Below, piece after piece: positions 1,651 through 21,555 of a DNA stretch of 64,000 bases. Location of the stretch: the IMG/VR virus record IMGVR_UViG_3300027708_000012, positions 281,370 through 345,369 of that record; one strand, given 5' to 3'. The notes below the pieces were generated by a model. It ran no database searches and was not told the DNA's origin. It saw only the letters and a program-made list of their open reading frames with translations. A program made the translations under genes and the position numbers. How positions within the stretch are numbered: the first letter of the stretch is position 1; each line of letters begins with the position of its first letter.

Positions 1651-1679
1651 ATTATACACTCAATATTTAAACAAGTCAA
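1651..1679 (-). promoter_or_regulatory. sigma70-type promoter for the helicase gene
   Basis: TTGACT-17 nt-TATAAT on minus strand. Confidence 0.75.
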
Positions 1680-1683
1680 CCAT

Positions 1684-1707
1684 AAAGAAACCCGCCGAAG
1701 CGGGTTC
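1684..1707 (-). terminator. Rho-independent terminator after tmRNA
   Basis: GAACCCGC-TTCG-GCGGGTTTCTTT on minus strand. Confidence 0.8.
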
Positions 1708-1716
1708 TACTATTTT

Positions 1717-2080
1717 TGGTGACAAAGCATAGTTGCTTCGCGAGGGCAGTTTTTTAGGCTGCTAATGCAAATTCTGCATCATTGGCAGAAGCCAATGTTA
1801 CTGGAACTTGAAAATACTCGAATGTAGATGTTTTAGCATTTACTTTAATTTGCTTGATTTACAGTCATCGCCTACTGAGTTGCCGTCTTCAATATCTAAC
1901 CCCGTCGAAACCATGGCAGGCCCATCATAAACACACTCAAATCTGAAAGGTGTCGCCTGTGACGCCTTGTGTTTATAACACCACCACTCGGGACTCAAAC
2001 CCGCATGTGTTTATGGTGGACCTGGCGGGAGTCGAACCCGCGTCCGAGATTCCTTCTATCCAAAGGAATTACAACTATTT
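1717..2080 (-). ncRNA. ssrA: Circularly permuted (two-piece) tmRNA
   Basis: Minus strand order: acceptor piece ending GCGGGTTCGACTCCCGCCAGGTCCACCA (CCA at 2014), 90-nt spacer, then 5' piece GGGCCTGCCATGGTTTCGACGGG (1923). Acceptor stem GGGCCTG/CAGGTCC has G3.U70. Tag frame ends ANDAEFALAA* at 1754. Confidence 0.92.
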
Positions 2081-2092
2081 CATTTAACCCAA

Positions 2093-2296
2093 TTACTTGG
2101 GTTGAATATTTGCTGCCTGCAAGCCTTTTTGACCTTGTACCACATCAAATGTCACTGATTGATTCTCTTGCAGAACTTTGAATCCTGATGTTTGAATCGC
2201 TGAGTAGTGTGCGAAAAGATCCTCGCCGCCGCCGTCTGGAGTAATAAACCCAAAACCTTTGGTTTCATTAAACCATTTTACTTTACCTGTTGCCAT
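2093..2296 (-). CDS. cspA: Cold-shock domain protein
   Basis: [21 protein letters not shown]...DLFAHYSAI...GLQAANI; RNP1/RNP2 motifs. Confidence 0.95.
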
Positions 2297-2404
2297 TTAC
2301 TTAATTTCCTGTTAAAACACTATTATAGTGTATTTTATTTATCAGAGCAAACATTTTGGCTAGAAAAACTAAATACTAGTACATTAAACACCGGGAGCGA
2401 ATCG

Positions 2405-2995
2405 ATGGCATTAGTCGACTCAGTATTAAATTTAATTAACAAGCAACCAAAAGATCCCAACGCACCAAAGCCTCTAGTAGGATCACGTAGCGAACGTGAA
2501 GCCAAACTAAAAGACAAAGCAGGTATGGTAATCAGTGTATTTGCACTATTACTTGCTGTCAACAGCTGGTACGGTGGCACACTCAGCAGTAAGGTATTAA
2601 ACAATACCATTGCTTCAAACAATGTATGGGCATTTTATCAAGCTAAAAGTATCAAACAAACTCTAGCAGAACAAAGCCTTGACGATGCTACTTATCGCAA
2701 AGAAACAGAAAAAATGGCTAAATTACAAGCCAAGATCGATCGTTACGAAAGCGATCCTAAAACAGGCGAAGGCAAAAAAGAATTAATGGAAAAGGCACGT
2801 GCGTTAGAAGCAGAGCGTGACGAAGCTAAAAAACGTAGCCCATGGATTGGTTATGCCAGTACAATGTATCAATTGAGTATTGTGGTGTTGTCAGCAAGTA
2901 TTCTTGCTGTTAGCATGAGCATGTTCTGGGGTAGCTTCTTTGTTGCTGGTTTAGGTGTATTGTTGTCAGCACAAGGCGTATACTTATTTTTCTAA
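2405..2995 (+). CDS. DUF4337-like membrane protein
   Basis: Start likely ATG 2405 after GGGAG and TAAATA; TM helices with WAFYQAKSIKQ and YQLSIVVLSASIL motifs. Confidence 0.7.
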   Translation: MALVDSVLNLINKQPKDPNAPKPLVGSRSEREAKLKDKAGMVISVFALLLAVNSWYGGTLSSKVLNNTIASNNVWAFYQAKSIKQTLAEQSLDDATYRKETEKMAKLQAKIDRYESDPKTGEGKKELMEKARALEAERDEAKKRSPWIGYASTMYQLSIVVLSASILAVSMSMFWGSFFVAGLGVLLSAQGVYLFF

Positions 2996-3003
2996 TTTAA
3001 AGA

Positions 3004-3106
3004 ACCCACCTTAGGGCACGTTAGTCGTCACGGTTATAGGCGTCCGAGCAATTGAACTGCACCTCGTTAGTGTGCCGGGAGATAAAGTAACTCCCACTTT
3101 TTTGGG
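3004..3106 (+). ncRNA. Candidate structured RNA ending in a terminator
   Basis: GGCACGTTAG...TTAGTGTGCC stem with G-U pairs, internal hairpins, then GGGAG-ATAAAGTAA-CTCCC-ACTTTTTT. Confidence 0.4.
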
Positions 3107-3116
3107 TAAATATATA

Positions 3117-3821
3117 ATGAATCCAATTATATATACCCTGATAGTAACACATATTACTATCGTCTGTGTTACCCTATTTTTACATAGAGGTCAAGCACAC
3201 AAAGGAATAGAATTCCACCCAATTCTAAGTCATTTTATGCGATTCTGGTTGTGGTTAACAACTGGAATGATTACTCGTCAATGGGTAGCTATACATCGTA
3301 AACATCATGTGTTCAGTGATAAGGAAGGCGATCCGCATAGTCCGCATATATTTGGCATTTGGAATATAGTATTTAAGGGTGTTACATTTTACGCTCGAGA
3401 AGGACGTAACGCTCAAACTATGATGAGTTACGGAAAAGGTACTCCTAATGATTGGATTGAACGTAATTTGTATACCCCATATAATTTCTACGGAATTCTT
3501 TTAATGTTGATTATAGATCTTGTATTATTTGGTCTGTGGGGATTAGTAATATGGGGTATACAAATGGTGTGGATACCTTTTTGGGCAGCAGGAGTTATTA
3601 ACGGAATAGGACATTGGTATGGATATCGTAACGGTACTACAAGGGATGGGAGTCGTAACATTAGTAACATTGGCATACTTATTGGTGGCGAAGAGTTGCA
3701 CAATAATCACCACTTGGATCCAGCGAGTGTTAAACTAAGTCGGCGCTGGTTTGAATTAGATATAGGCTGGATGTGGTTAAGTTTATTTAGATTTTTAAGA
3801 CTAGCTAAACTTACACGTTAA
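3117..3821 (+). CDS. Membrane fatty acid desaturase (delta-9/DesA type)
   Basis: His boxes HRGQAH, HRKHH, HNNHH; GEELHNNHH and WFELDIGW; ATG 3117 directly after TAAATA. Confidence 0.92.
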   Translation: MNPIIYTLIVTHITIVCVTLFLHRGQAHKGIEFHPILSHFMRFWLWLTTGMITRQWVAIHRKHHVFSDKEGDPHSPHIFGIWNIVFKGVTFYAREGRNAQTMMSYGKGTPNDWIERNLYTPYNFYGILLMLIIDLVLFGLWGLVIWGIQMVWIPFWAAGVINGIGHWYGYRNGTTRDGSRNISNIGILIGGEELHNNHHLDPASVKLSRRWFELDIGWMWLSLFRFLRLAKLTR

Positions 3822-3822
3822 C

Positions 3823-4581
3823 TTATAGATTACTTGCGTATTTTGTTGCTGTTGGAGCACGTTTAGCGGCTTGTACTTTGGCATTAGCTGGTCTTTCAAA
3901 CTTGTGTGTCCATGCTCTACTGGCGGCATCTGCACTAGGGTACTCTCGTCCTATATATCTTGCACCGTCTGGCTCGGATAATGCAAAATCAATTTGTCCT
4001 TGCCAGTTATCTTTCCAACTTGGACCTAATTTTTGTTTTAATTGCGCAAATCGAGGACCGTTATGTTGAAATAATCCTCCACTAGGTAAGCCGTTAGAAT
4101 CAATAGTTTCAACTCCTGATCTAAAGCCAGACTCGTGTGCTATGTTAGCCATCATGCCTGCAATCTGTGTTATGCTCATATTCCATTTTTGTTTGCAATG
4201 ACGAGCGATATCCCGCCAAGGAACAGAACCTGCAACTTGTTTAATTTCAACTTTAGGTTTAGCTACTGGCGGCGCCTTTGCTGTTTGTACTGGTGGCAAG
4301 GATTTAGGCTTGGCCGCTGGTGTAGCAACTGCTGTTGCTTTGGCTTTTGCAATATCTGCAGGACCAGTCATTCTTGTGTCAACGCCCGGAGGGCCAAATG
4401 GTGCTCTGCTAGGTATAGATTTTGGATCTAGTTTACCTGATCCTATTTTAGCAATATCGTCTTCTGCTTCTAGTGCATCAGCAAACTGTTGAGCTGGCGA
4501 ATTAGTTTTTGGTGCTAGGCCTTTAGCTTGTAACAGATTGTCTAAATCGTCTTCTTTAATAGTAAATTCGTTTGCTCTCAT
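3823..4581 (-). CDS. Phage tail lysozyme (Phage_lysozyme2-like) domain protein
   Basis: AGMMANIAHESG...GLFQHNGPR...QIDF...FERPA. Confidence 0.8.
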   Translation of the reverse strand: MRANEFTIKEDDLDNLLQAKGLAPKTNSPAQQFADALEAEDDIAKIGSGKLDPKSIPSRAPFGPPGVDTRMTGPADIAKAKATAVATPAAKPKSLPPVQTAKAPPVAKPKVEIKQVAGSVPWRDIARHCKQKWNMSITQIAGMMANIAHESGFRSGVETIDSNGLPSGGLFQHNGPRFAQLKQKLGPSWKDNWQGQIDFALSEPDGARYIGREYPSADAASRAWTHKFERPANAKVQAAKRAPTATKYASNL

Positions 4582-4588
4582 ACACTAT

Positions 4589-5230
4589 TTATCGCTTTCT
4601 TAGTTCGTTGACAAAATCTAACAGTAGCGCATGATGTTTTCCATTGTGGTACTTGCCTTTCATCCAACTATAGCTATTGTACCAAAATTGTTCACTTTCT
4701 GGATGAGCGCCAATCAGTCCTATACGTCCTTTTATTATAGCCATAGGGTCGTCGTTAGCATACTTGGCAATAGTATCATAATACCCTGTACCAGTAAAGG
4801 CACAGCCATCGTACCAAAACATGTTCATTGGGGTTCCTAGCCATTCTATTTTTATGTTTTTAGCATGCGGGCGGCGAGTATCTGTATTAGGTTGTTTTAG
4901 ATACTGTACAGCATCTATATCGCCTAGTAAATTAAAATAATGTTTGCCAGCCCAATACGCCCCCATGCATATACCAAGATAATAACCACCATTAGCTATA
5001 AACTGCTTAATACGAGCACCGTTATACTTAAACGCACGATTGAAGCTACTAGCATCACCGAAGCCGCCAGGAACTGCTACAATATCTACGCCATCAAAGA
5101 AGTTGTCTTCTAATTCGTTGATGCCAAAGATTTTAAAATTATAAAAGGCACTAAGTGCCTTTATAATACCATTTCCACTCTGCACTGAACACTTAGGATC
5201 GTACAAGAATAGTGCAATTGTAGGTTTCAT
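4589..5230 (-). CDS. BPL_N / class I glutamine amidotransferase-like protein
   Basis: VPGG, YLGICMGAY, HPE motifs; start ATG 5230 overlaps upstream stop. Confidence 0.8.
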   Translation of the reverse strand: MKPTIALFLYDPKCSVQSGNGIIKALSAFYNFKIFGINELEDNFFDGVDIVAVPGGFGDASSFNRAFKYNGARIKQFIANGGYYLGICMGAYWAGKHYFNLLGDIDAVQYLKQPNTDTRRPHAKNIKIEWLGTPMNMFWYDGCAFTGTGYYDTIAKYANDDPMAIIKGRIGLIGAHPESEQFWYNSYSWMKGKYHNGKHHALLLDFVNELRKR

Positions 5231-5355
5231 TTGAATAGTGTATGTTCTGCGTTGATCCACATGATTAACAGTATTAACCATAATACTCTTAATACGTTGT
5301 CAAAAATTCGTTCGTACCAATCTAATAATGTTTTAGTTTCTTTTTGTTGTGTCAT
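5227..5355 (-). CDS. Small membrane protein (42 aa)
   Basis: MTQQKETKTLLDWYERIFDNVLRVLWLILLIMWINAEHTLFK*, ATGA overlap with next gene. Confidence 0.55.
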   Translation of the reverse strand: MTQQKETKTLLDWYERIFDNVLRVLWLILLIMWINAEHTLFK

Positions 5356-5473
5356 TTTTTACTTCTATTTGTTGTACTTCTGGCTCAATATATTTGTCCC
5401 AGACTTTCTGTCCCGAGTTCCAACCAAATACTGTACAAAATCCAATAGCAACATAAGTTAGAATAAATCCCAT
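5333..5473 (-). CDS. Small membrane protein (46 aa)
   Basis: MGFILTYVAIGFCTVFGWNSGQKVWDKYIEPEV...; AAAGGA RBS and upstream TAAATA. Confidence 0.55.
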   Translation of the reverse strand: MGFILTYVAIGFCTVFGWNSGQKVWDKYIEPEVQQIEVKNDTTKRN

Positions 5474-5515
5474 GTCTGTGTCCTTTCATTAACTACTACT
5501 ATTTAGCCGGGCCGT

Positions 5516-5538
5516 AAAAATAGGAACCAAAGTTCCTA
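5516..5538 (-). terminator. Rho-independent terminator
   Basis: TAGGAAC-TTTG-GTTCCTA-TTTTTT on minus strand. Confidence 0.7.
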
Positions 5539-5618
5539 CTGTGGATTACGGATTCCCACGACACCTTATCTTGTGCCCGATTTAAAAATGCTTCCGAAAA
5601 AATTACGGAAGCTGCTTA

Positions 5619-6263
5619 TTACTTCCCCAATAGGCTATCAACCTTTGCTTCAGCAATGTCTAAACGAGCTTCGATAGCATCTAATGCTGGATCTGCTGGA
5701 ACTGCAACTGCTTCAACAACTTGTTGAACTACTTCTGGAGCAACTTCTTCACCTGTTGCGGCTGCAATAACTTCAGCAACTGCGTCAGCGGCAGCTTGTG
5801 CTACTTCTGGAGCTGGCGTTGGCATGTCAGCAACTGCGGCGATGATAGCGGCTGTGATTGCCACTGGATCAACTACAACTTCTGGCTCTGCTACAACAAC
5901 TGCCATAACTGCGGCTGAAACAATATCAGCAACTTCTGAGTGCTCAACTGGTTCTGCTTCGTACTGTGCTGTAACAACATCAGCAACTATGTCAGCGGCT
6001 TCTGCATGATCGGCACTTGGAGATAGTGCAACTACTTCTTCAACTTCAAAAGGTGCATCATTTGCTACGGCAGCAATGATAGCATCAATGTGAGCTTCTG
6101 TTTTTTCGGCAATTAAGTGATCAACTTGAACTTCAACTAGAGACAATCGTGCGTCTAGTTCTTCGATGCTTGTGGCATTGTCTGTATTAACTGATGTACC
6201 AGTTAGTGTTGCTAACTTGGCTTCTACGGAAACTAATCTTGCGGCTAAATCTTCTAATCTCAT
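5619..6263 (-). CDS. Acidic Ala/Val/Glu-rich protein with three short coiled-coil repeats
   Basis: LxARLxxxE(A/V)(K/Q)(L/V)xxL three times; AAGGAG RBS. Confidence 0.75.
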   Translation of the reverse strand: MRLEDLAARLVSVEAKLATLTGTSVNTDNATSIEELDARLSLVEVQVDHLIAEKTEAHIDAIIAAVANDAPFEVEEVVALSPSADHAEAADIVADVVTAQYEAEPVEHSEVADIVSAAVMAVVVAEPEVVVDPVAITAAIIAAVADMPTPAPEVAQAAADAVAEVIAAATGEEVAPEVVQQVVEAVAVPADPALDAIEARLDIAEAKVDSLLGK

Positions 6264-6346
6264 GTGATGCTCCTTAAGGGTTATGAGTGTGTACCACTAC
6301 GGCACACATCTATTTAAGTGATAACCGATTACAGCAGTATTACAAG

Positions 6347-7057
6347 TTAACTCCAATATCGATTATGGTATAAACTATCCCAGTAGGCTTTGTTATTGCG
6401 ATTGATAAAATTCTTAACAAGGTACTTGCCCATGCCAAGGTATCCCATCTTTTTAAATCTACGCGAGTCTTGCCCAAGGTGGTGGCGAACAATCCTAAAC
6501 TTCCTAGGATTGTATTTTTTAGATAAAAAGTAATCTTCACTTGTTAATAAGTTCTCAGGAAACCCGCCGTACTCTTCAAACTTATCTCTGCGTGTGAGCA
6601 TAAACGCACCGACCGCAAATGGACTAAAGAATTTTAGCGTATGGTTAATTAAATTAAATGCTGTGAATCCAATCTTTGCCCTAATATCCTTATCATAGCA
6701 TTTGATATTCAATCCAATAAGGTCTAGTTTTTTACGTTCAATTAATCTAACAGCATCACGAATAACAGTGGGTTTAAAAAATCGTACATCAGCATCAATG
6801 AATAAGATATAAGGTGTAGTGACTAGTCTAGCACCATTGTTTTTAGCAATACTAACAGGGCCGCCATCGATAATTTCTACATTTAAGTTACCCTTCATCA
6901 ATTGAATAACTTCACGTGTATTGTCCGTTGAACAGTCTGCAATGATGATTCTAGTGCTACCTATCATTTGATTGCGTAGGTGTGTTAATAGATAGGGAAT
7001 ATAGTTTTCCTCATTCTTACAAGGAATTACAATAGTAATCTTATCGCTGAATATCAT
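6347..7057 (-). CDS. Glycosyltransferase family 2
   Basis: TIVIPCKNEE, IIADCSTDNT, LFIDADV, SEDYFLS motifs. Confidence 0.9.
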   Translation of the reverse strand: MIFSDKITIVIPCKNEENYIPYLLTHLRNQMIGSTRIIIADCSTDNTREVIQLMKGNLNVEIIDGGPVSIAKNNGARLVTTPYILFIDADVRFFKPTVIRDAVRLIERKKLDLIGLNIKCYDKDIRAKIGFTAFNLINHTLKFFSPFAVGAFMLTRRDKFEEYGGFPENLLTSEDYFLSKKYNPRKFRIVRHHLGQDSRRFKKMGYLGMGKYLVKNFINRNNKAYWDSLYHNRYWS

Positions 7058-7224
7058 TGTTTCTTGCATTCGCCTACTACCTTAAAACTTTTAAACTTTA
7101 GTTGCCACTTCAATGTGCTTAGGACTTGCTCGCAAGTCTTTTGATCGTGGAATGTTAGTTCTACTTTTCCTGGCTGATCCGTCGGATCGTTTACGTGTAT
7201 CGCTATTAGGATCAATAACCACAT
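7054..7224 (-). CDS. Small exported protein (56 aa)
   Basis: MWLLILIAIHVNDPTDQPGKVELTFHDQKTCEQ...GECKKQ*; AGGAG RBS; ATGA overlap with GT2. Confidence 0.6.
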   Translation of the reverse strand: MWLLILIAIHVNDPTDQPGKVELTFHDQKTCEQVLSTLKWQLKFKSFKVVGECKKQ

Positions 7225-7978
7225 TGTCTTTCTCCTGTGTCCATGTAACTATCTCCCAAGTACCGTTATGATGTTCTACTAGGGCTGTACAACTTTCAAC
7301 CCAATCGCCATCATTCATATAAACAACATCATCTATGTTTTTAATTTCAGCATGATGTATGTGCCCGCATATAACACCATCAAAGCCACGCTTTTTACAA
7401 TATCCAGCAAGGTTCTTTTCAAAGTGGAACATAAAGTCCACAGCTTTCTTTACTCGCTTCTTAAGGTACTGACTAAGGCTAAAGTACCCAAAACCAAAGC
7501 GATGGCGTAGCCAATTGAACTTGCTATTAATCGATAAAATGACATCATATGCTTTGTCTCCTAAAAATGCTATCCACGGTGCTAGTCTAGTAATGCCATC
7601 AAACAAGTCACCGTGTGTAACTAAGTAATGATTGCCGTCAGCACCTATGTGTTCTATTTGATTGTGTATCTCAACGAGTCCAAAACTGAATCCATAAGGA
7701 ATCATTGGTCTTAAAAATTCGTCGTGATTTCCTGCAATATAAACGACACGAGTACCACGTTTAGCATGACCGAGAACACGACGCACCACATTAGTGTGGC
7801 TCTGTTTCCATCTCCATTTATTTTGTTGGATTCGCCAGGCATCAATTATATCTCCTACAAGGTATAGGGTATCACAAGAGTTGTGTTTAAGAAAGTTGTT
7901 TAACTTATCTGCTTGACAATCCCTTGTGCCTAAATGCACATCACTAATGAAAATGCTACGATAAGTTTTGGTTTCCAT
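7091..7978 (-). CDS. Metallophosphoesterase, PlcP/LpxH-like phospholipase C
   Basis: FISDVHLG, LVGDIID, GNHDEFLR, HGDLFD, GHIHH, GDWVESCTALVE motifs. Confidence 0.88.
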   Translation of the reverse strand: METKTYRSIFISDVHLGTRDCQADKLNNFLKHNSCDTLYLVGDIIDAWRIQQNKWRWKQSHTNVVRRVLGHAKRGTRVVYIAGNHDEFLRPMIPYGFSFGLVEIHNQIEHIGADGNHYLVTHGDLFDGITRLAPWIAFLGDKAYDVILSINSKFNWLRHRFGFGYFSLSQYLKKRVKKAVDFMFHFEKNLAGYCKKRGFDGVICGHIHHAEIKNIDDVVYMNDGDWVESCTALVEHHNGTWEIVTWTQEKDNVVIDPNSDTRKRSDGSARKSRTNIPRSKDLRASPKHIEVATKV

Positions 7979-19647: not shown

Positions 19648-21555
19648 TTACTTTTTGTCAGTAGGGTCAACCTCTGTGAAAGCCGCATTAACTGACTGGC
19701 CTTCTTCAGGTTGTACTGGTGCTGATTGCGCTGCACTTTCTGCAGCTTGCTTCTTGGCCATAACTGGACCTGCTGCCTCAAAAAATGTTTCAACTGATTT
19801 TTGAATAACATCTTTGTCGTCCCCTGCGCAAGCAGTTTCTACTGCTTTAACAGCATCGTCAAACTTAGTCTTTTCTTCTTCAGTCAATTGATCTTTGTAT
19901 GTATCATAGTCTTTCTTGATACTGTGTGTAGTACCTTCAGCATTGTTACGTGCTGTGATTAATTCTGCTTGTTTCTTATCTGCTTCGGCATTTTCCTCAG
20001 CTTCTTGAACCATGCGTTTGATCTCAGCTTCTGTCAATCCGCTATCTGACTTGATAGTGATTTTGTTTTCTTTGCCGGTCTTTTTATCCCTGGCACTTAC
20101 ATTTAAAATACCGTTTGCATCGATATCTAATGTAACTTCAATCTGTGGCATGCCACGTGGTGCAGGATCAATACCTTCCAAGTTAAACTCGCCAAGCGAT
20201 TTATTGTACTTGAATAAGTCACGTTCGCCCTGAGCAACCTTAATAGTTACTGCTGGCTGATTGTCATCTGCTGTACTAAATGTTTGGCTATGTTTGGTCG
20301 GGATAGTTGTGTTTTTAGCAATCAGCTTGGTAAACACACCGCCCATTGTTTCAATACCTAGTGTCAATGGAGTAACGTCCAACAACAATACGTCTGTCTT
20401 GTCGCCAGCTAGAACAGCGCCTTGTACTGCGGCACCAGCGGCAACTGCTTCGTCTGGGTTAACGTCTTTACGTGGAGCCTTACCAAACAGTTTCTCAACT
20501 GCTTCTTGTACTTTAGGCATACGTGTTTGACCACCAACTAGAATAACTTCGTCGATGTCTGCGGCGCTAACTTTAGCATCTGCCATAGCAACTTTACATG
20601 GCTCAATTGAACGCTGGATCAGTCCGTCTACCATTGCTTCAAACTTAGCACGGCTGATAGTTACATTCATGTGCTTAGGACCGTTTGCATCTGCTGTAAT
20701 GTAAGGCAAGTTAACACTTGTACTTGCGGCTGTAGATAATTCAATCTTGGCTTTTTCAGCAGACTCTTTCAAACGTTGTAATGCAAGAACGTCTTGCTTC
20801 AAATCAACTCCGTTGTCTTTCTTGAACTCGTCTACCAAATAGTCCATGATAGCTTGGTCAAAGTCTTCACCGCCTAGGAATGTATCGCCGTTTGTTGACA
20901 ATACTTCAATTTGCTTGTCGCCATCAATGTTAGCGATTTCAATGATTGAAATATCAAATGTACCACCACCCAAGTCATAGACTGCAATCTTGCGATCTTT
21001 CTTGTCTGCTTTGTCAACACCATAAGCCAATGCGGCCGCTGTCGGCTCGTTGATAATACGTAGAACTTCTAAGCCTGCAATACGTCCGGCATCTTTAGTA
21101 GCTTGACGCTGGCTATCGTTGAAGTAAGCTGGAACTGTAATAACAGCTTGGGTCACTGTTGTACCTAAATAGTCTTCAGCAGTTTTTTTCATTTTGCGAA
21201 GTACTTCAGCTGATACTTGCTGTGGTGCAAGTTTTTCGCCGTTTGCTTCGATCCAAGCATCACCGTTGTCTGCTTTAATAATGCTGTAGGGCATCAAGTC
21301 AATATCTTTTTGCACAGCAGCTTCGTCAAACTTGCGACCAATAAGGCGCTTGCTGGCGTAAATTGTATTTTTTGGGTTTGTGACTGCTTGTCGTTTTGCT
21401 GTTGCACCAACTAGGATTTCGTCCTTTGTATATGCAATGATTGATGGTGTTGTTCTTGCGCCTTCGCTATTTTCAATAACTTTTGCTACTCCATTTTCTA
21501 GGATAGCTACGCAACTGTTTGTTGTACCTAAATCGATACCGATGATTTTACTCAT
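19648..21555 (-). CDS. dnaK: Chaperone DnaK (Hsp70)
   Basis: [35 protein letters not shown]; full length 635 aa. Confidence 0.98.

What the first reader, a model, noticed from the sequence alone, without database searches (positions are those of the whole stretch)
1717..2080. Phage-encoded circularly permuted (two-piece) tmRNA
Seen: the tRNA-like 3' half with CCA lies upstream of the 5' half; G3.U70 alanine identity; the spacer is closed by ATAAACACA/TGTGTTTAT; ATAGTTGT at the front pairs with GCAACTAT near the end. Known: permuted tmRNAs occur in Alphaproteobacteria, some Betaproteobacteria and some cyanobacteria. Inference: the phage supplies its own ribosome-rescue RNA, probably co-transcribed with the cold-shock gene just upstream.
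Basis: partly seen in the sequence, partly recalled or inferred. Interest (0 to 1): 0.75.

Follow-up and report, generated by a model that had tools for sequence, protein, structure and literature searches.

The report
Jumbo-phage two-piece tmRNA, long tag
A 345-kb freshwater phage carries a complete, circularly permuted ribosome-rescue RNA (tmRNA) placed directly behind a cold-shock gene. Phage tmRNAs of this kind are already known, but this lineage encodes an unusually long, conserved degradation tag.

Summary
ARAGORN and two Rfam covariance models (tmRNA_permuted 125.9 bits, beta_tmRNA 106.1 bits, both above the curated cut-offs) call a permuted tmRNA on the minus strand at window 2078-1684. 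The window is the end of a 345-kb virus record with 29 tRNAs and no SmpB. The ATAGTTGT/GCAACTAT pairing is probably not the working helix: that 5' strand pairs with CAACU at 1882-1878 (helix P2), where the inner pairs covary strongly.

Phage-encoded two-piece tmRNAs are already published (Buchholz 2022), so the core finding is a member of a known kind. Comparison with 86 IMG/VR relatives adds three things:
- The tag is 27 aa rather than about 10. Its frame shows third-codon-position variation and a conserved N-terminal motif, and this tag type was not found in 185,579 bacterial species genomes.
- The cold-shock gene abuts the tmRNA in 13 of 16 long-tag lineages against 1 of 49 short-tag ones, which supports co-transcription.
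- Long-tag jumbo phages also encode ClpA and ClpP.

Expression and processing into two pieces remain untested.

The parts
2322..2350 (-). Candidate promoter of the csp-tmRNA unit: -35 TTGCTC (2350-2345), 17-nt spacer, -10 TATAAT (2327-2322)
   Evidence: Read from the sequence. The -35 matches only 3 of 6 positions, so the consensus scan did not list it. This is an inference.
2093..2296 (-). Cold-shock protein gene (67 aa), closest to the CspE type
   Evidence: Pfam CSD 1.7e-29. NCBIfam CspE model 110.6 bits, below the 120-bit cut-off. Found directly upstream of the tmRNA in at least 25 related viral loci.
2086..2103 (-). Hairpin CCCAA-GUAA-UUGGG that holds the csp stop codon in its GNRA-type loop. 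It is a possible processing site between the mRNA and the tmRNA.
   Evidence: Sequence. A like hairpin (CAGC-GUAA-GCUG) occurs in relative L084. Its function is not tested.
2014..2078 (-). Acceptor piece of the two-piece tmRNA. The 5' end is approximate; the 3' end is the encoded CCA at 2014.
   Evidence: ARAGORN 3' tRNA domain and the Rfam alignment. In relatives without csp a TATAAT box lies about 8 nt upstream of this start.
2072..2076 (-). 5' strand of the outer P2 helix (AGUUG)
   Evidence: Rfam structure and cofold. Compensatory types GUUG/CAAC, GCUG/CAGC and GUCG/CGAC occur in relatives.
2050..2068 (-). Local hairpin UUCCUU...AAGGAA inside the acceptor piece
   Evidence: Folded. The stem sequence differs in relatives (CCUUC/GAAGG, GCCUU/AAGGC, CCCUU/AAGGG). 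The Rfam beta model instead pairs this stretch with the coding piece, so the point is unresolved.
2025..2041 (-). T-arm GCGGG-UUCGACU-CCCGC
2014..2024 (-). Acceptor 3' strand CAGGUCC, discriminator A and CCA
   Evidence: It pairs with GGGCCUG to give G3.U70.
1924..2013 (-). Intervening spacer (90 nt) to be excised. It has a 9-bp closing helix and an internal T-arm-like hairpin CGGG-UUUGAGU-CCCG (2003-1989).
   Evidence: Fold z = -2.5. Closing helix conserved across 44 unrelated spacer clusters. 97% identical to the spacer of L034, whose tag differs.
1684..1923 (-). Coding piece of the tmRNA, from the 5' G of the acceptor stem to the terminator
   Evidence: ARAGORN 5' tRNA domain at 1923-1897. 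The Rfam beta_tmRNA alignment runs to 1686.
1878..1882 (-). 3' strand of the outer P2 helix (CAACU)
1862..1877 (-). PK1 hairpin CAGU-AGGCGAUG-ACUG
   Evidence: Rfam alignment. The second stem of the pseudoknot was not verified.
1754..1837 (-). Tag reading frame: resume codon GCU at 1837-1835, 27 codons, stop UAA at 1756-1754. The peptide ends in ...ANDAEFALAA.
   Evidence: ARAGORN. The resume context UAAAU-GCN is conserved, and variation falls mostly on third codon positions in relatives.
1707..1741 (-). Post-stop hairpin (1741-1722) whose loop ACUAU can pair with AUAGU (about 1712-1708), forming the terminal pseudoknot of the beta type
   Evidence: Fold. The Rfam beta model pairs ACUAU with AUAGU. 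The stem covaries in relatives (CGGUA/UACCG, GGUA/UACC).
1684..1707 (-). Intrinsic terminator GAACCCGC-UUCG-GCGGGUUU followed by a U-tract
   Evidence: Covarying hairpins sit at the same place in relatives.

Best explanation
This is a functional, phage-encoded, circularly permuted (two-piece) tmRNA gene of the betaproteobacterial structural type. It lies on the minus strand of a roughly 345-kb freshwater jumbo phage.

Proposed mechanism:
1. Inferred: the gene is transcribed as the distal part of a csp-ssrA unit that ends at the terminator at 1707-1684.
2. Inferred from the family: the precursor folds so that a 9-bp helix closes the 90-nt spacer. Host tRNA-processing enzymes then cut at the 5' G (1923) and after the CCA (2014).
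3. Shown by covariation: this leaves an acceptor piece and a coding piece held together by the acceptor stem and P2.
4. Inferred: the RNA is charged with alanine through G3.U70 and, with the host's SmpB (the phage has none), enters stalled ribosomes.
5. Translation then switches to the internal frame, which adds a 27-residue tag ending in ALAA. Coding selection shows that the whole long frame is read.
6. The tag most likely marks the rescued peptides for Clp-type proteolysis, possibly by the phage's own ClpA/ClpP.

The net effect proposed is that ribosomes stay free during infection, alongside the phage's 29 tRNAs.
For: Detection and context:
- Two independent detectors agree.
- The gene sits in a virus record flanked by phage genes.
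- The tRNA-Ala identity elements and CCA are in the sequence.

Structure:
- The inner P2 pairs are canonical in 63-66 of 66 unique relatives, with U-A, C-G, A-U and G-C types.
- The spacer-closing helix is conserved across 44 unrelated spacer clusters.
- A terminator is present.

Tag frame:
- All 17 unique long-tag relatives keep the frame open from the same UAAAU-GCN resume context.
- The other two frames hold stops (16 of 16 sequences in +1, 14 of 16 in +2).
- Within close groups the variable sites fall 1/3/14 on codon positions 1/2/3, with 9 synonymous and 5 conservative columns.

Link to csp:
- csp abuts the tmRNA in 13 of 16 long-tag lineages against 1 of 49 short-tag lineages.
- Only 3-15 nt separate the csp stop codon from the first helix strand.

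Partners:
- No SmpB in this phage or in 5 relatives.
- ClpP (258 bits) and a ClpA-like unfoldase (880 bits to TIGR02639) are encoded in the same genome, and likewise in long-tag relatives G001 and G002.
Against: - There is no direct evidence of transcription, processing or tagging. The metatranscriptome contigs that could be laid showed only pieces shared with relatives, plus csp.
- The host is unknown, so compatibility with its SmpB and AlaRS is assumed.
- The Rfam beta model aligns only the last 10 codons to its consensus tag and treats the upstream 59 nt as an insertion. The long tag therefore rests on comparative evidence only.
- The long-tag phages are related to each other, so the co-occurrence with csp and ClpA/ClpP is not a set of independent events.
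- One relative with a long tag (G003, 79% complete) showed no ClpP.
Confidence: 0.8

Rival explanations
1. The tmRNA is real, but only the last 10 codons (ANDAEFALAA) are translated. The resume codon would be the GCC at 1786-1784, as in ordinary betaproteobacterial tmRNAs, and the upstream 51 nt would be untranslated RNA.
For: The beta_tmRNA model aligns its consensus tag region to GCC AAU GAU GCA GAA UUU GCA UUA GCA GCC UAA and calls the preceding 59 nt an insertion. That short peptide looks like a standard beta tag.
Against: - The conserved resume context UAAAU-GCN sits at the upstream site in all long-tag relatives.
- The upstream codons vary mostly at third positions and keep a peptide motif A-x-x-x-T-F-[ED]-[YF] through synonymous changes (TTC/TTT, ACA/ACT).
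- Length differences between lineages are multiples of three.
- Several long tags (for example ...GKSKVALAA and ...ADSRLVA) have no internal ANDxxF module at which translation could resume.
Confidence: 0.1
2. The RNA acts mainly as a decoy. It would soak up host SmpB or compete with the host tmRNA, as proposed for the tRNA-like-domain-only molecule of mycobacteriophage DS6A, rather than rescue ribosomes for the phage's benefit.
For: - The phage and its relatives encode no SmpB, so any activity draws on the host's pool.
- A tRNA-like-domain-only phage molecule that inhibits tmRNA is on record (PMC4131195, PMC11915505).
Against: A decoy needs only the tRNA-like domain. Here the resume context, a frame under coding selection, a canonical ALAA end, PK1, the terminal pseudoknot and the terminator are all kept.
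Confidence: 0.06
3. The gene is a passenger: host DNA picked up by the phage, an attachment-site remnant or an assembly chimera, with no role in infection.
For: - Many temperate phages carry tmRNA fragments as attachment sites. Most blastn hits in the phage collection are such 40-60-nt pieces.
- tmRNA genes are common integration sites.
Against: - The gene is complete rather than a 3' fragment.
- No integrase is found in the genome.
- The same csp-tmRNA cassette, with shared neighbours (fatty-acid desaturase, BPL_N, metallophosphoesterase, DUF4337), recurs in dozens of independent viral contigs from many samples.
- The long-tag resume motif was not found in any tmRNA of 185,579 bacterial species genomes: the scan gave 7 chance hits and none is a tmRNA.
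Confidence: 0.04

Closest known systems
Betaproteobacterial two-piece tmRNA (Rfam RF01850 beta_tmRNA; merged model RF04321 tmRNA_permuted, PMC11915505)
   Same: - Same gene order: acceptor piece with CCA, then spacer, then coding piece.
- Same tRNA-like domain, P2, PK1 hairpin, post-stop pseudoknot hairpin and terminator.
- Full-length match to both models above their cut-offs.
- The tag ends in the typical ANDxxFALAA.
   Different: - It is encoded by a phage with no SmpB gene beside it.
- There are 59 extra nucleotides between PK1 and the consensus tag region, giving a 27-residue tag with a conserved N-terminal module.
- It is fused behind a csp gene.
- ARAGORN reports 'Tag not identified'.
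Phage-encoded two-piece tmRNAs of marine myophages (Melnitz, pelagimyophages, cyanophages; Buchholz et al. 2022, PMC9004378)
   Same: A complete permuted ssrA in a lytic aquatic phage without SmpB, read as an aid to the hijacked translation machinery. That survey already counted 53 two-piece forms among 133 unique phage tmRNAs.
   Different: - Melnitz carries the alphaproteobacterial type with a glutamine riboswitch and its own early promoter.
- The present gene is the beta type, freshwater, sits behind csp, has a long tag and lies in a jumbo genome that also encodes ClpA and ClpP.
Xanthomonas jumbo phage XacN1 (AP018399), unannotated permuted tmRNA at about 37.18-37.60 kb
   Same: - It is the closest isolate in the phage collection (74.7% identity over 39% of the query).
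- It has the beta type (107.8 bits) and tmRNA_permuted (123.2 bits).
- Its tag ANANTFDYALAA carries the same N-terminal module.
- It has no SmpB.
   Different: - Short tag (12 residues), with no csp upstream.
- A 114-nt spacer of unrelated sequence.
- Only a weak ClpP-like match and no ClpA.
- A GOLLD RNA lies 1 kb downstream.
- As far as I know, its Xanthomonas host has an ordinary one-piece tmRNA (general knowledge, not tested here).
One-piece tmRNAs of mycobacteriophages (Bxz1 group) and Bacillus phage G (PMC4131195, PMC12484599), and tmRNA/SmpB in huge phages (PMC7162821)
   Same: Large phages with many tRNAs that also carry ssrA. Phage G also encodes ClpP and ClpX.
   Different: Those genes are not permuted and have short tags (13 residues in phage G). 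Some huge phages bring their own SmpB. No link between tmRNA and Clp genes was drawn in those papers.
Long ssrA tags of Mollicutes that are read by Lon rather than ClpXP (from memory, not checked here)
   Same: A tag of about 27 residues whose extra length carries recognition determinants for a different protease.
   Different: That is a bacterial one-piece tmRNA of unrelated sequence. The phage encodes ClpA and ClpP, and no Lon was found.

Membership tests
tmRNA, circularly permuted form (Rfam RF04321 / RF01850) | Covariance-model score above the curated gathering score over the full model | tested here: met
   RF04321: 125.9 bits against 47, model positions 1-213 of 213. RF01850: 106.1 bits against 84, model positions 1-331 of 331.
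tmRNA, circularly permuted form | Permuted gene order: T-arm, acceptor 3' strand and CCA lie upstream of the acceptor 5' strand, separated by an intervening segment | tested here: met
   ARAGORN 'Permuted': 3' tRNA domain at 2052-2014 and 5' tRNA domain at 1923-1897, with a 90-nt spacer between them.
tmRNA (any form) | Alanine identity: G3.U70 in a 7-bp acceptor stem, discriminator A, CCA end | tested here: met
   GGGCCUG pairs with CAGGUCC and is followed by ACCA, read from the sequence. Charging itself was not tested.
tmRNA, two-piece | The two pieces are held together by P2 pairing, supported by covariation | tested here: met
   Inner P2 pairs are canonical in 63-66 of 66 unique viral relatives, with 3-4 pair types each. 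Outer helix pairs are canonical in 36-53 of 66 on a plain MAFFT alignment, with compensatory types (cofold).
tmRNA (any form) | Resume codon for alanine after a U/A-rich context, then a short frame ending in hydrophobic residues and a stop | tested here: met
   UAAAU-GCU, then 27 codons ending ...FALAA-UAA. The frame is conserved and under coding selection in relatives. It is longer than the family norm.
tmRNA (any form) | Pseudoknot PK1 upstream of the resume codon | tested here: inconclusive
   The 4-bp PK1 hairpin of the model is matched. The second stem of the pseudoknot is not in the covariance model and I did not establish it.
tmRNA, two-piece | The precursor is cut into two stable RNAs with ends at the CCA and at the 5' G | not testable with these tools
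   Only assembled contigs of metatranscriptomes could be laid. They show conserved pieces from relatives and no ends.
tmRNA-SmpB system | A dedicated SmpB partner | tested here: not met
   No SmpB (PF01668) in G000 or in five related phage records, with controls positive. The RNA must use the host's SmpB, and the host is unknown. This is usual for phage tmRNAs and does not argue against the RNA family.
Phage-encoded gene (not host or attachment-site DNA) | Lies inside a viral genome, is complete, and recurs in related viral contigs | tested here: met
   Virus record 94% complete. Phage genes lie on both sides and there is no integrase. The cassette and its neighbours are shared with many viral contigs.
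ClpAP substrate tag (working hypothesis for the long tag) | The tag is bound and degraded by the phage's ClpA/ClpP | not tested
   The evidence is co-occurrence only. ClpA-like and ClpP genes occur in G000, G001 and G002. G003 has the ClpA-like gene only. Both are absent from short-tag G004 and from XacN1.

The most novel reading that the evidence does not exclude
An abundant lineage of freshwater (mostly jumbo) phages carries a phage-specific trans-translation cassette.
- A csp gene is fused to a permuted tmRNA whose tag has grown to 22-31 residues. The tag has a conserved N-terminal module (A-x-x-x-T-F-[ED]-[YF]) in front of the usual ALAA-type end.
- The long tag would be a private degron read by the phage's own ClpA/ClpP, so the phage both frees ribosomes and decides what happens to the tagged proteins.
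- The excised spacer of the permuted gene serves as a swappable cargo slot. In several lineages it encodes 23-32-residue hydrophobic peptides.
- Because the csp stop codon sits 3-15 nt from the tmRNA's 5' end (in this phage, inside a hairpin loop), cutting out the tmRNA may also trim the csp message. This could couple Csp output to tmRNA processing.
Probability: 0.3. Interest if true: 0.75.

Novelty: new variant of a known kind. Interest (0 to 1): 0.55.

Why it matters
Why phages carry tmRNA is an open question, and published cases offer little to test. This lineage offers three concrete handles:
- A long tag with a conserved extra module that is seen only in viral contigs.
- A fixed fusion to a cold-shock (RNA chaperone or antiterminator) gene.
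- Co-encoded ClpA and ClpP.

Together these suggest that the phage brings a tag-and-destroy kit rather than a simple spare part. That idea can be tested with reporters and purified proteins without culturing the phage. A cultured relative (XacN1) carries the short form of the same RNA, so far unannotated.

The hypervariable spacers with conserved closing helices show how permuted RNA genes can host cargo. If none of this holds, the finding is still a clean, correctly read example of a known kind.

Tried and rejected
- **Expression evidence.** Two run searches and one read-laying run (30) gave only assembled metatranscriptome contigs. These matched conserved tRNA-like parts of relatives and csp, so they say nothing about this gene's transcription or ends.
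- **Host identity.** Searches with Csp and ClpP returned only near-identical copies (93% or more) from related phage contigs. The contigs encoding 92-93% identical Csp were all phage-like.
- **Bacterial comparison set.** No bacterial genome handle could be obtained. I could therefore not sample bacterial beta-type tmRNAs directly. The claim that the long tag is phage-specific rests on one exact-pattern scan and on the Rfam consensus.
- **Isolate relatives.** Megablast of 8 kb against the phage collection found nothing. The helicase had only distant hits. The large phrog_22485 protein turned out to be DnaK and gave no phage relatives.
A simple complementarity count could not separate it from P2, because the U-rich strand finds G.U-tolerant partners everywhere. 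The judgement rests on the covariance models, the cofold results and the local hairpin.
- **GOLLD RNA.** It is present next to XacN1's tmRNA but was not found in G000. That search's controls were silent, so this result is weak.
- **Other RNA families.** The sub-threshold cspA thermoregulator match (38.7 against 78 bits) is taken as coding-sequence similarity. No riboswitch like that of Melnitz was seen.
- **Other proteins in G000.** No SspB, RF-1/ArfB or Lon was found.
- **Complex prediction.** I did not run a tag-ClpA complex prediction.

Full report
**What is there**

The stretch 1717-2080 lies inside a gene on the minus strand. ARAGORN finds one tmRNA in the 64-kb window, marks it as permuted and places it at 2106-1663. 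It gives:
- the 3' tRNA-like domain at 2052-2014;
- the 5' tRNA-like domain at 1923-1897;
- a tag frame at 1837-1754.

Rfam agrees through two models, and both matches cover the full model. The merged tmRNA_permuted model scores 125.9 bits against a gathering score of 47. The betaproteobacterial beta_tmRNA model scores 106.1 bits against 84 (repeated). No other curated RNA family reaches threshold there.

The window is the last 64 kb of a 345,369-bp virus record with 38% G+C, estimated 94% complete. That genome holds 29 tRNA genes. Twenty-eight of them form an array on the same strand that ends about 7 kb upstream of the tmRNA. It has no SmpB and no integrase. The window also holds ribonucleotide reductase, virion proteins and other phage families. 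The RNA gene is therefore phage-borne.

- *Acceptor stem.* GGGCCUG (1923-1917) pairs with CAGGUCC (2024-2018). This gives G3.U70, followed by A and an encoded CCA that ends at 2014.
- *Is the closing helix more than chance?* I collected 92 viral contigs from IMG/VR with a pattern for the two halves of the tRNA-like domain. ARAGORN calls a permuted tmRNA in 86 of them. Their 63 unique spacers fall into 44 clusters with no sequence likeness. Even so, the first and last 14 nt form a helix of median 10 bp, against about 6 bp when 5' and 3' ends of different spacers are combined.
A post-stop hairpin (1741-1722), its pseudoknot partner and an intrinsic terminator (1707-1684) follow the stop codon.
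- *Front/end helix.* The one detail I do not accept is the pairing of ATAGTTGT (2078-2071) with GCAACTAT (1736-1729). The complementarity is perfect. However, AGUUG is the 5' strand of helix P2 in both covariance models and pairs with CAACU at 1882-1878. GCAACUAU is itself buried in a local 8-bp hairpin.
- *P2 support.* Across 66 unique relatives the inner P2 pairs are canonical in 63-66 cases, with U-A, C-G, A-U and G-C all represented. The outer helix shows GUUG/CAAC, GCUG/CAGC and GUCG/CGAC. A crude complementarity count could not separate the two proposals, so the rejection rests on the models and folds.

**The tag**

ARAGORN reads 27 codons from GCU at 1837 (AKTSTFEYFQVPVTLASANDAEFALAA) and notes 'Tag not identified'. 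The beta model aligns only the last ten codons to its consensus tag and treats 59 nt before them as an insertion. The question is therefore whether the long frame is real.

Seventeen unique viral sequences have tags of 22-31 residues that start from the same UAAAU-GCN context. The evidence that the frame is read is as follows:
- All keep the frame open, while the other two frames carry stops.
- Their lengths differ by whole codons.
- They share an N-terminal module A-[KNT]-[TA]-[SDN]-T-F-[ED]-[YF], maintained through synonymous changes (TTC/TTT, ACA/ACT).
- Within three groups of close relatives the variable sites fall 1, 3 and 14 on codon positions 1, 2 and 3. Nine variable columns are synonymous and five are conservative.

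This is the signature of a translated frame. I therefore take the 27-residue tag as the product and keep the 10-residue reading as a rival at about 0.1.

An exact-pattern scan for the long-tag resume region in one genome of each of 185,579 bacterial and archaeal species gave seven hits. None lies in a tmRNA. With the caveat that the pattern is exact, this tag type is seen only in viral contigs.

**The cold-shock gene**

The gene at 2296-2093 is a 67-residue CSD protein, closest to the CspE type.

Within the window:
- No terminator and no consensus promoter lies between csp and the tmRNA.
- The csp stop codon sits in the GUAA loop of a hairpin at 2103-2086, 15 nt before the tmRNA's first helix strand.
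- A TATAAT with a weak -35 lies upstream of csp (2327-2322 and 2350-2345, read).

Comparison is more telling:
- A csp gene of 72-91% identity lies directly upstream, on the same strand, in at least 25 of the viral loci.
- On unique sequences with enough flank, 13 of 16 long-tag genes have csp upstream, against 1 of 49 short-tag genes (Fisher p = 4.5e-10). The lineages are related, so these are not independent events.
- In most of them only 3-15 nt separate the csp stop codon from the P2 strand.
- The long-tag relatives without csp (L073, L012, L034) carry a TATAAT box about 8 nt upstream of the same point.
- Further contigs found through near-identical Csp proteins show the same cassette (L109, L111-L113). 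Others have csp without a tmRNA.

Co-transcription is therefore well supported by anatomy, though no transcript has been seen.

**How it most likely works**

- *Shown:* the sequence and structure features of a two-piece tmRNA, the pairing between the pieces, a translated long frame, and the fixed link to csp.
- *Inferred from the family:* excision of the spacer by tRNA-processing enzymes, charging with alanine, entry into stalled ribosomes with SmpB, and tagging for proteolysis.

SmpB must come from the host, because neither this phage nor five relatives encode it.

The same genome encodes a bona fide ClpP. It scores 258 bits to Pfam and 296 bits to NCBIfam NF001368, above that model's cut-off. 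The genome also encodes a 758-residue ClpA-like unfoldase with Clp_N, two AAA modules and the D2-small domain. Its best NCBIfam model is ClpA at 880 bits, below the 993-bit equivalog cut-off. No ClpX, Lon or SspB was found.

Among relatives:

| Record | Tag | ClpP | ClpA-like |
|---|---|---|---|
| G001 (long-tag jumbo) | long | yes | yes |
| G002 (long-tag jumbo) | long | yes | yes |
| G003 (79% complete) | long | not found | yes |
| G004 (complete) | short | no | no |
| XacN1 | short | weak ClpP-like match only | no |

I therefore propose, as a hypothesis only, that the long tag feeds the phage's own ClpAP.

**What is known already**

- Phage tmRNAs have been listed since the mycobacteriophage and phage G cases (PMC4131195).
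- Huge phages with tmRNA and SmpB were noted in PMC7162821.
- The 2025 tmRNA database holds 79 unique phage sequences (PMC11915505).
- Buchholz et al. (PMC9004378) described a two-piece tmRNA in phage Melnitz. They counted 53 two-piece forms among 133 unique phage tmRNAs, mostly from marine phages.
- Phage ClpA genes are known in PA5oct-like phages, and phage G has tmRNA plus ClpXP (PMC12484599).

A phage-encoded permuted tmRNA is therefore not new as a kind. I did not find the long conserved tag, the csp fusion or the tmRNA-ClpAP pairing described in the open literature I could search. That search cannot see subscription journals.

**Closest isolate**

Xanthomonas jumbo phage XacN1 has an unannotated beta-type permuted tmRNA (107.8 and 123.2 bits). 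Its 12-residue tag, ANANTFDYALAA, is the N-terminal module joined directly to ALAA. It is a cultured entry point for experiments.

**Limits**

- The host is unknown. The runs that hold the sequence are freshwater lake metagenomes.
- There is no evidence of expression, processing or tagging.
- I could not assemble a bacterial comparison set.
- The co-occurrence arguments rest on related phages.

**Verdict**

As a kind the gene is already known. As a lineage it is a new variant with testable features.

Noticed in passing
Relatives L007, L008, L017, L019, L036, L039, L049, L051, L054, L066: the spacer between CCA and the 5' G of the tmRNA: Ten of 63 unique spacers, from five unrelated spacer families, hold an ATG-ORF of 23-32 codons. 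Each starts 11-15 nt after the CCA and stops 1-2 nt before the mature 5' G. The peptides are strongly hydrophobic (GRAVY 1.15-2.3). Shuffled spacers give 1.4 such ORFs on average, with mean GRAVY 0.18. They look like small membrane peptides carried in the excised segment. The window's own spacer has none.
   Followed up: partly
window 1924-2013 compared with L034; spacer type shared by L012/L015/L016/L058/L064/L084: Spacers are swapped between tmRNA genes with different tags. L034 shares the window's T-arm, spacer and 5' coding end at 96.9% identity although its tag and flanks differ. Another 101-nt spacer type occurs with seven different tags. The invariant tRNA-like halves on either side probably serve as recombination arms.
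   Followed up: partly
L035, L067 (also L020, L070, L056) spacers; window 1989-2003: Some spacers contain tRNA-like or T-arm-like elements. ARAGORN at a relaxed threshold calls a tRNA in the spacers of L035 and L067. The window's spacer has a hairpin CGGG-UUUGAGU-CCCG.
   Followed up: no
L003 (XacN1, AP018399) 2949-3368 and 4342-4755: The published XacN1 record has no annotation for its beta-type permuted tmRNA (107.8 and 123.2 bits). It also lacks annotation for a GOLLD RNA (227 bits) about 1 kb downstream, amid tRNA genes.
   Followed up: partly
G000 C1:231626-232168 (-) and C1:181509-183785 (-), outside the window: The phage encodes a full ClpP and a 758-residue ClpA-like unfoldase. Related long-tag jumbo phages do too.
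   Followed up: partly
window 19648-21555 (-): A full-length DnaK (Hsp70). It scores 963 bits to the NCBIfam DnaK equivalog, above the cut-off, and is about 67% identical to proteobacterial DnaK. Together with Csp, ClpA and ClpP it gives the phage a protein- and RNA-quality-control gene set.
   Followed up: no
L054, L091, L048, L057 and L056, L047: between csp and the tmRNA: Some relatives carry extra mini-ORFs between csp and the tmRNA. One is a 22-residue hydrophobic peptide (MKAYQFIVAV...). In L056 and L047 there are two short, very basic peptides. In each case the stop codon lies just before the tmRNA's first helix strand.
   Followed up: no
window 2086-2103 (-): The csp stop codon lies in the GUAA loop of a 5-bp hairpin just before the tmRNA, and relative L084 has a like hairpin. 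If the tmRNA's 5' end is made by a cut here, the csp message would end at or near its stop codon. From memory, this recalls how arfA mRNA is made non-stop by cleavage. This is untested speculation.
   Followed up: no
window 1651-1679 (-): A near-consensus sigma-70 promoter (TTGACT, 17 nt, TATAAT; 11 of 12 positions) lies right after the tmRNA terminator. It drives the ResIII-type helicase gene at 2-1627. This suggests that this part of the phage is read by host RNA polymerase.
   Followed up: no
window 2405-7978 and relatives L043, L053, L058, L065, L073, L091, L105-L113: The tmRNA neighbourhood is shared in shuffled order among many related viral contigs. It comprises a DUF4337 protein, a fatty-acid desaturase, a BPL_N/GATase-like protein, a GT2 glycosyltransferase and a metallophosphoesterase.
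   Followed up: no
L024, L061: Two viral loci give an odd ARAGORN tag (GATIYDEMINGLQVATSERVSGLVMA followed by three stops) with a different P2 sequence. This is either another lineage or a miscalled resume codon.
   Followed up: no
G000 C1:261025-275644 (-): Twenty-eight tRNA genes lie in one 15-kb array on the same strand as the tmRNA, ending about 7 kb upstream of it. One further tRNA-Met is at C1:5282-5358.
   Followed up: no
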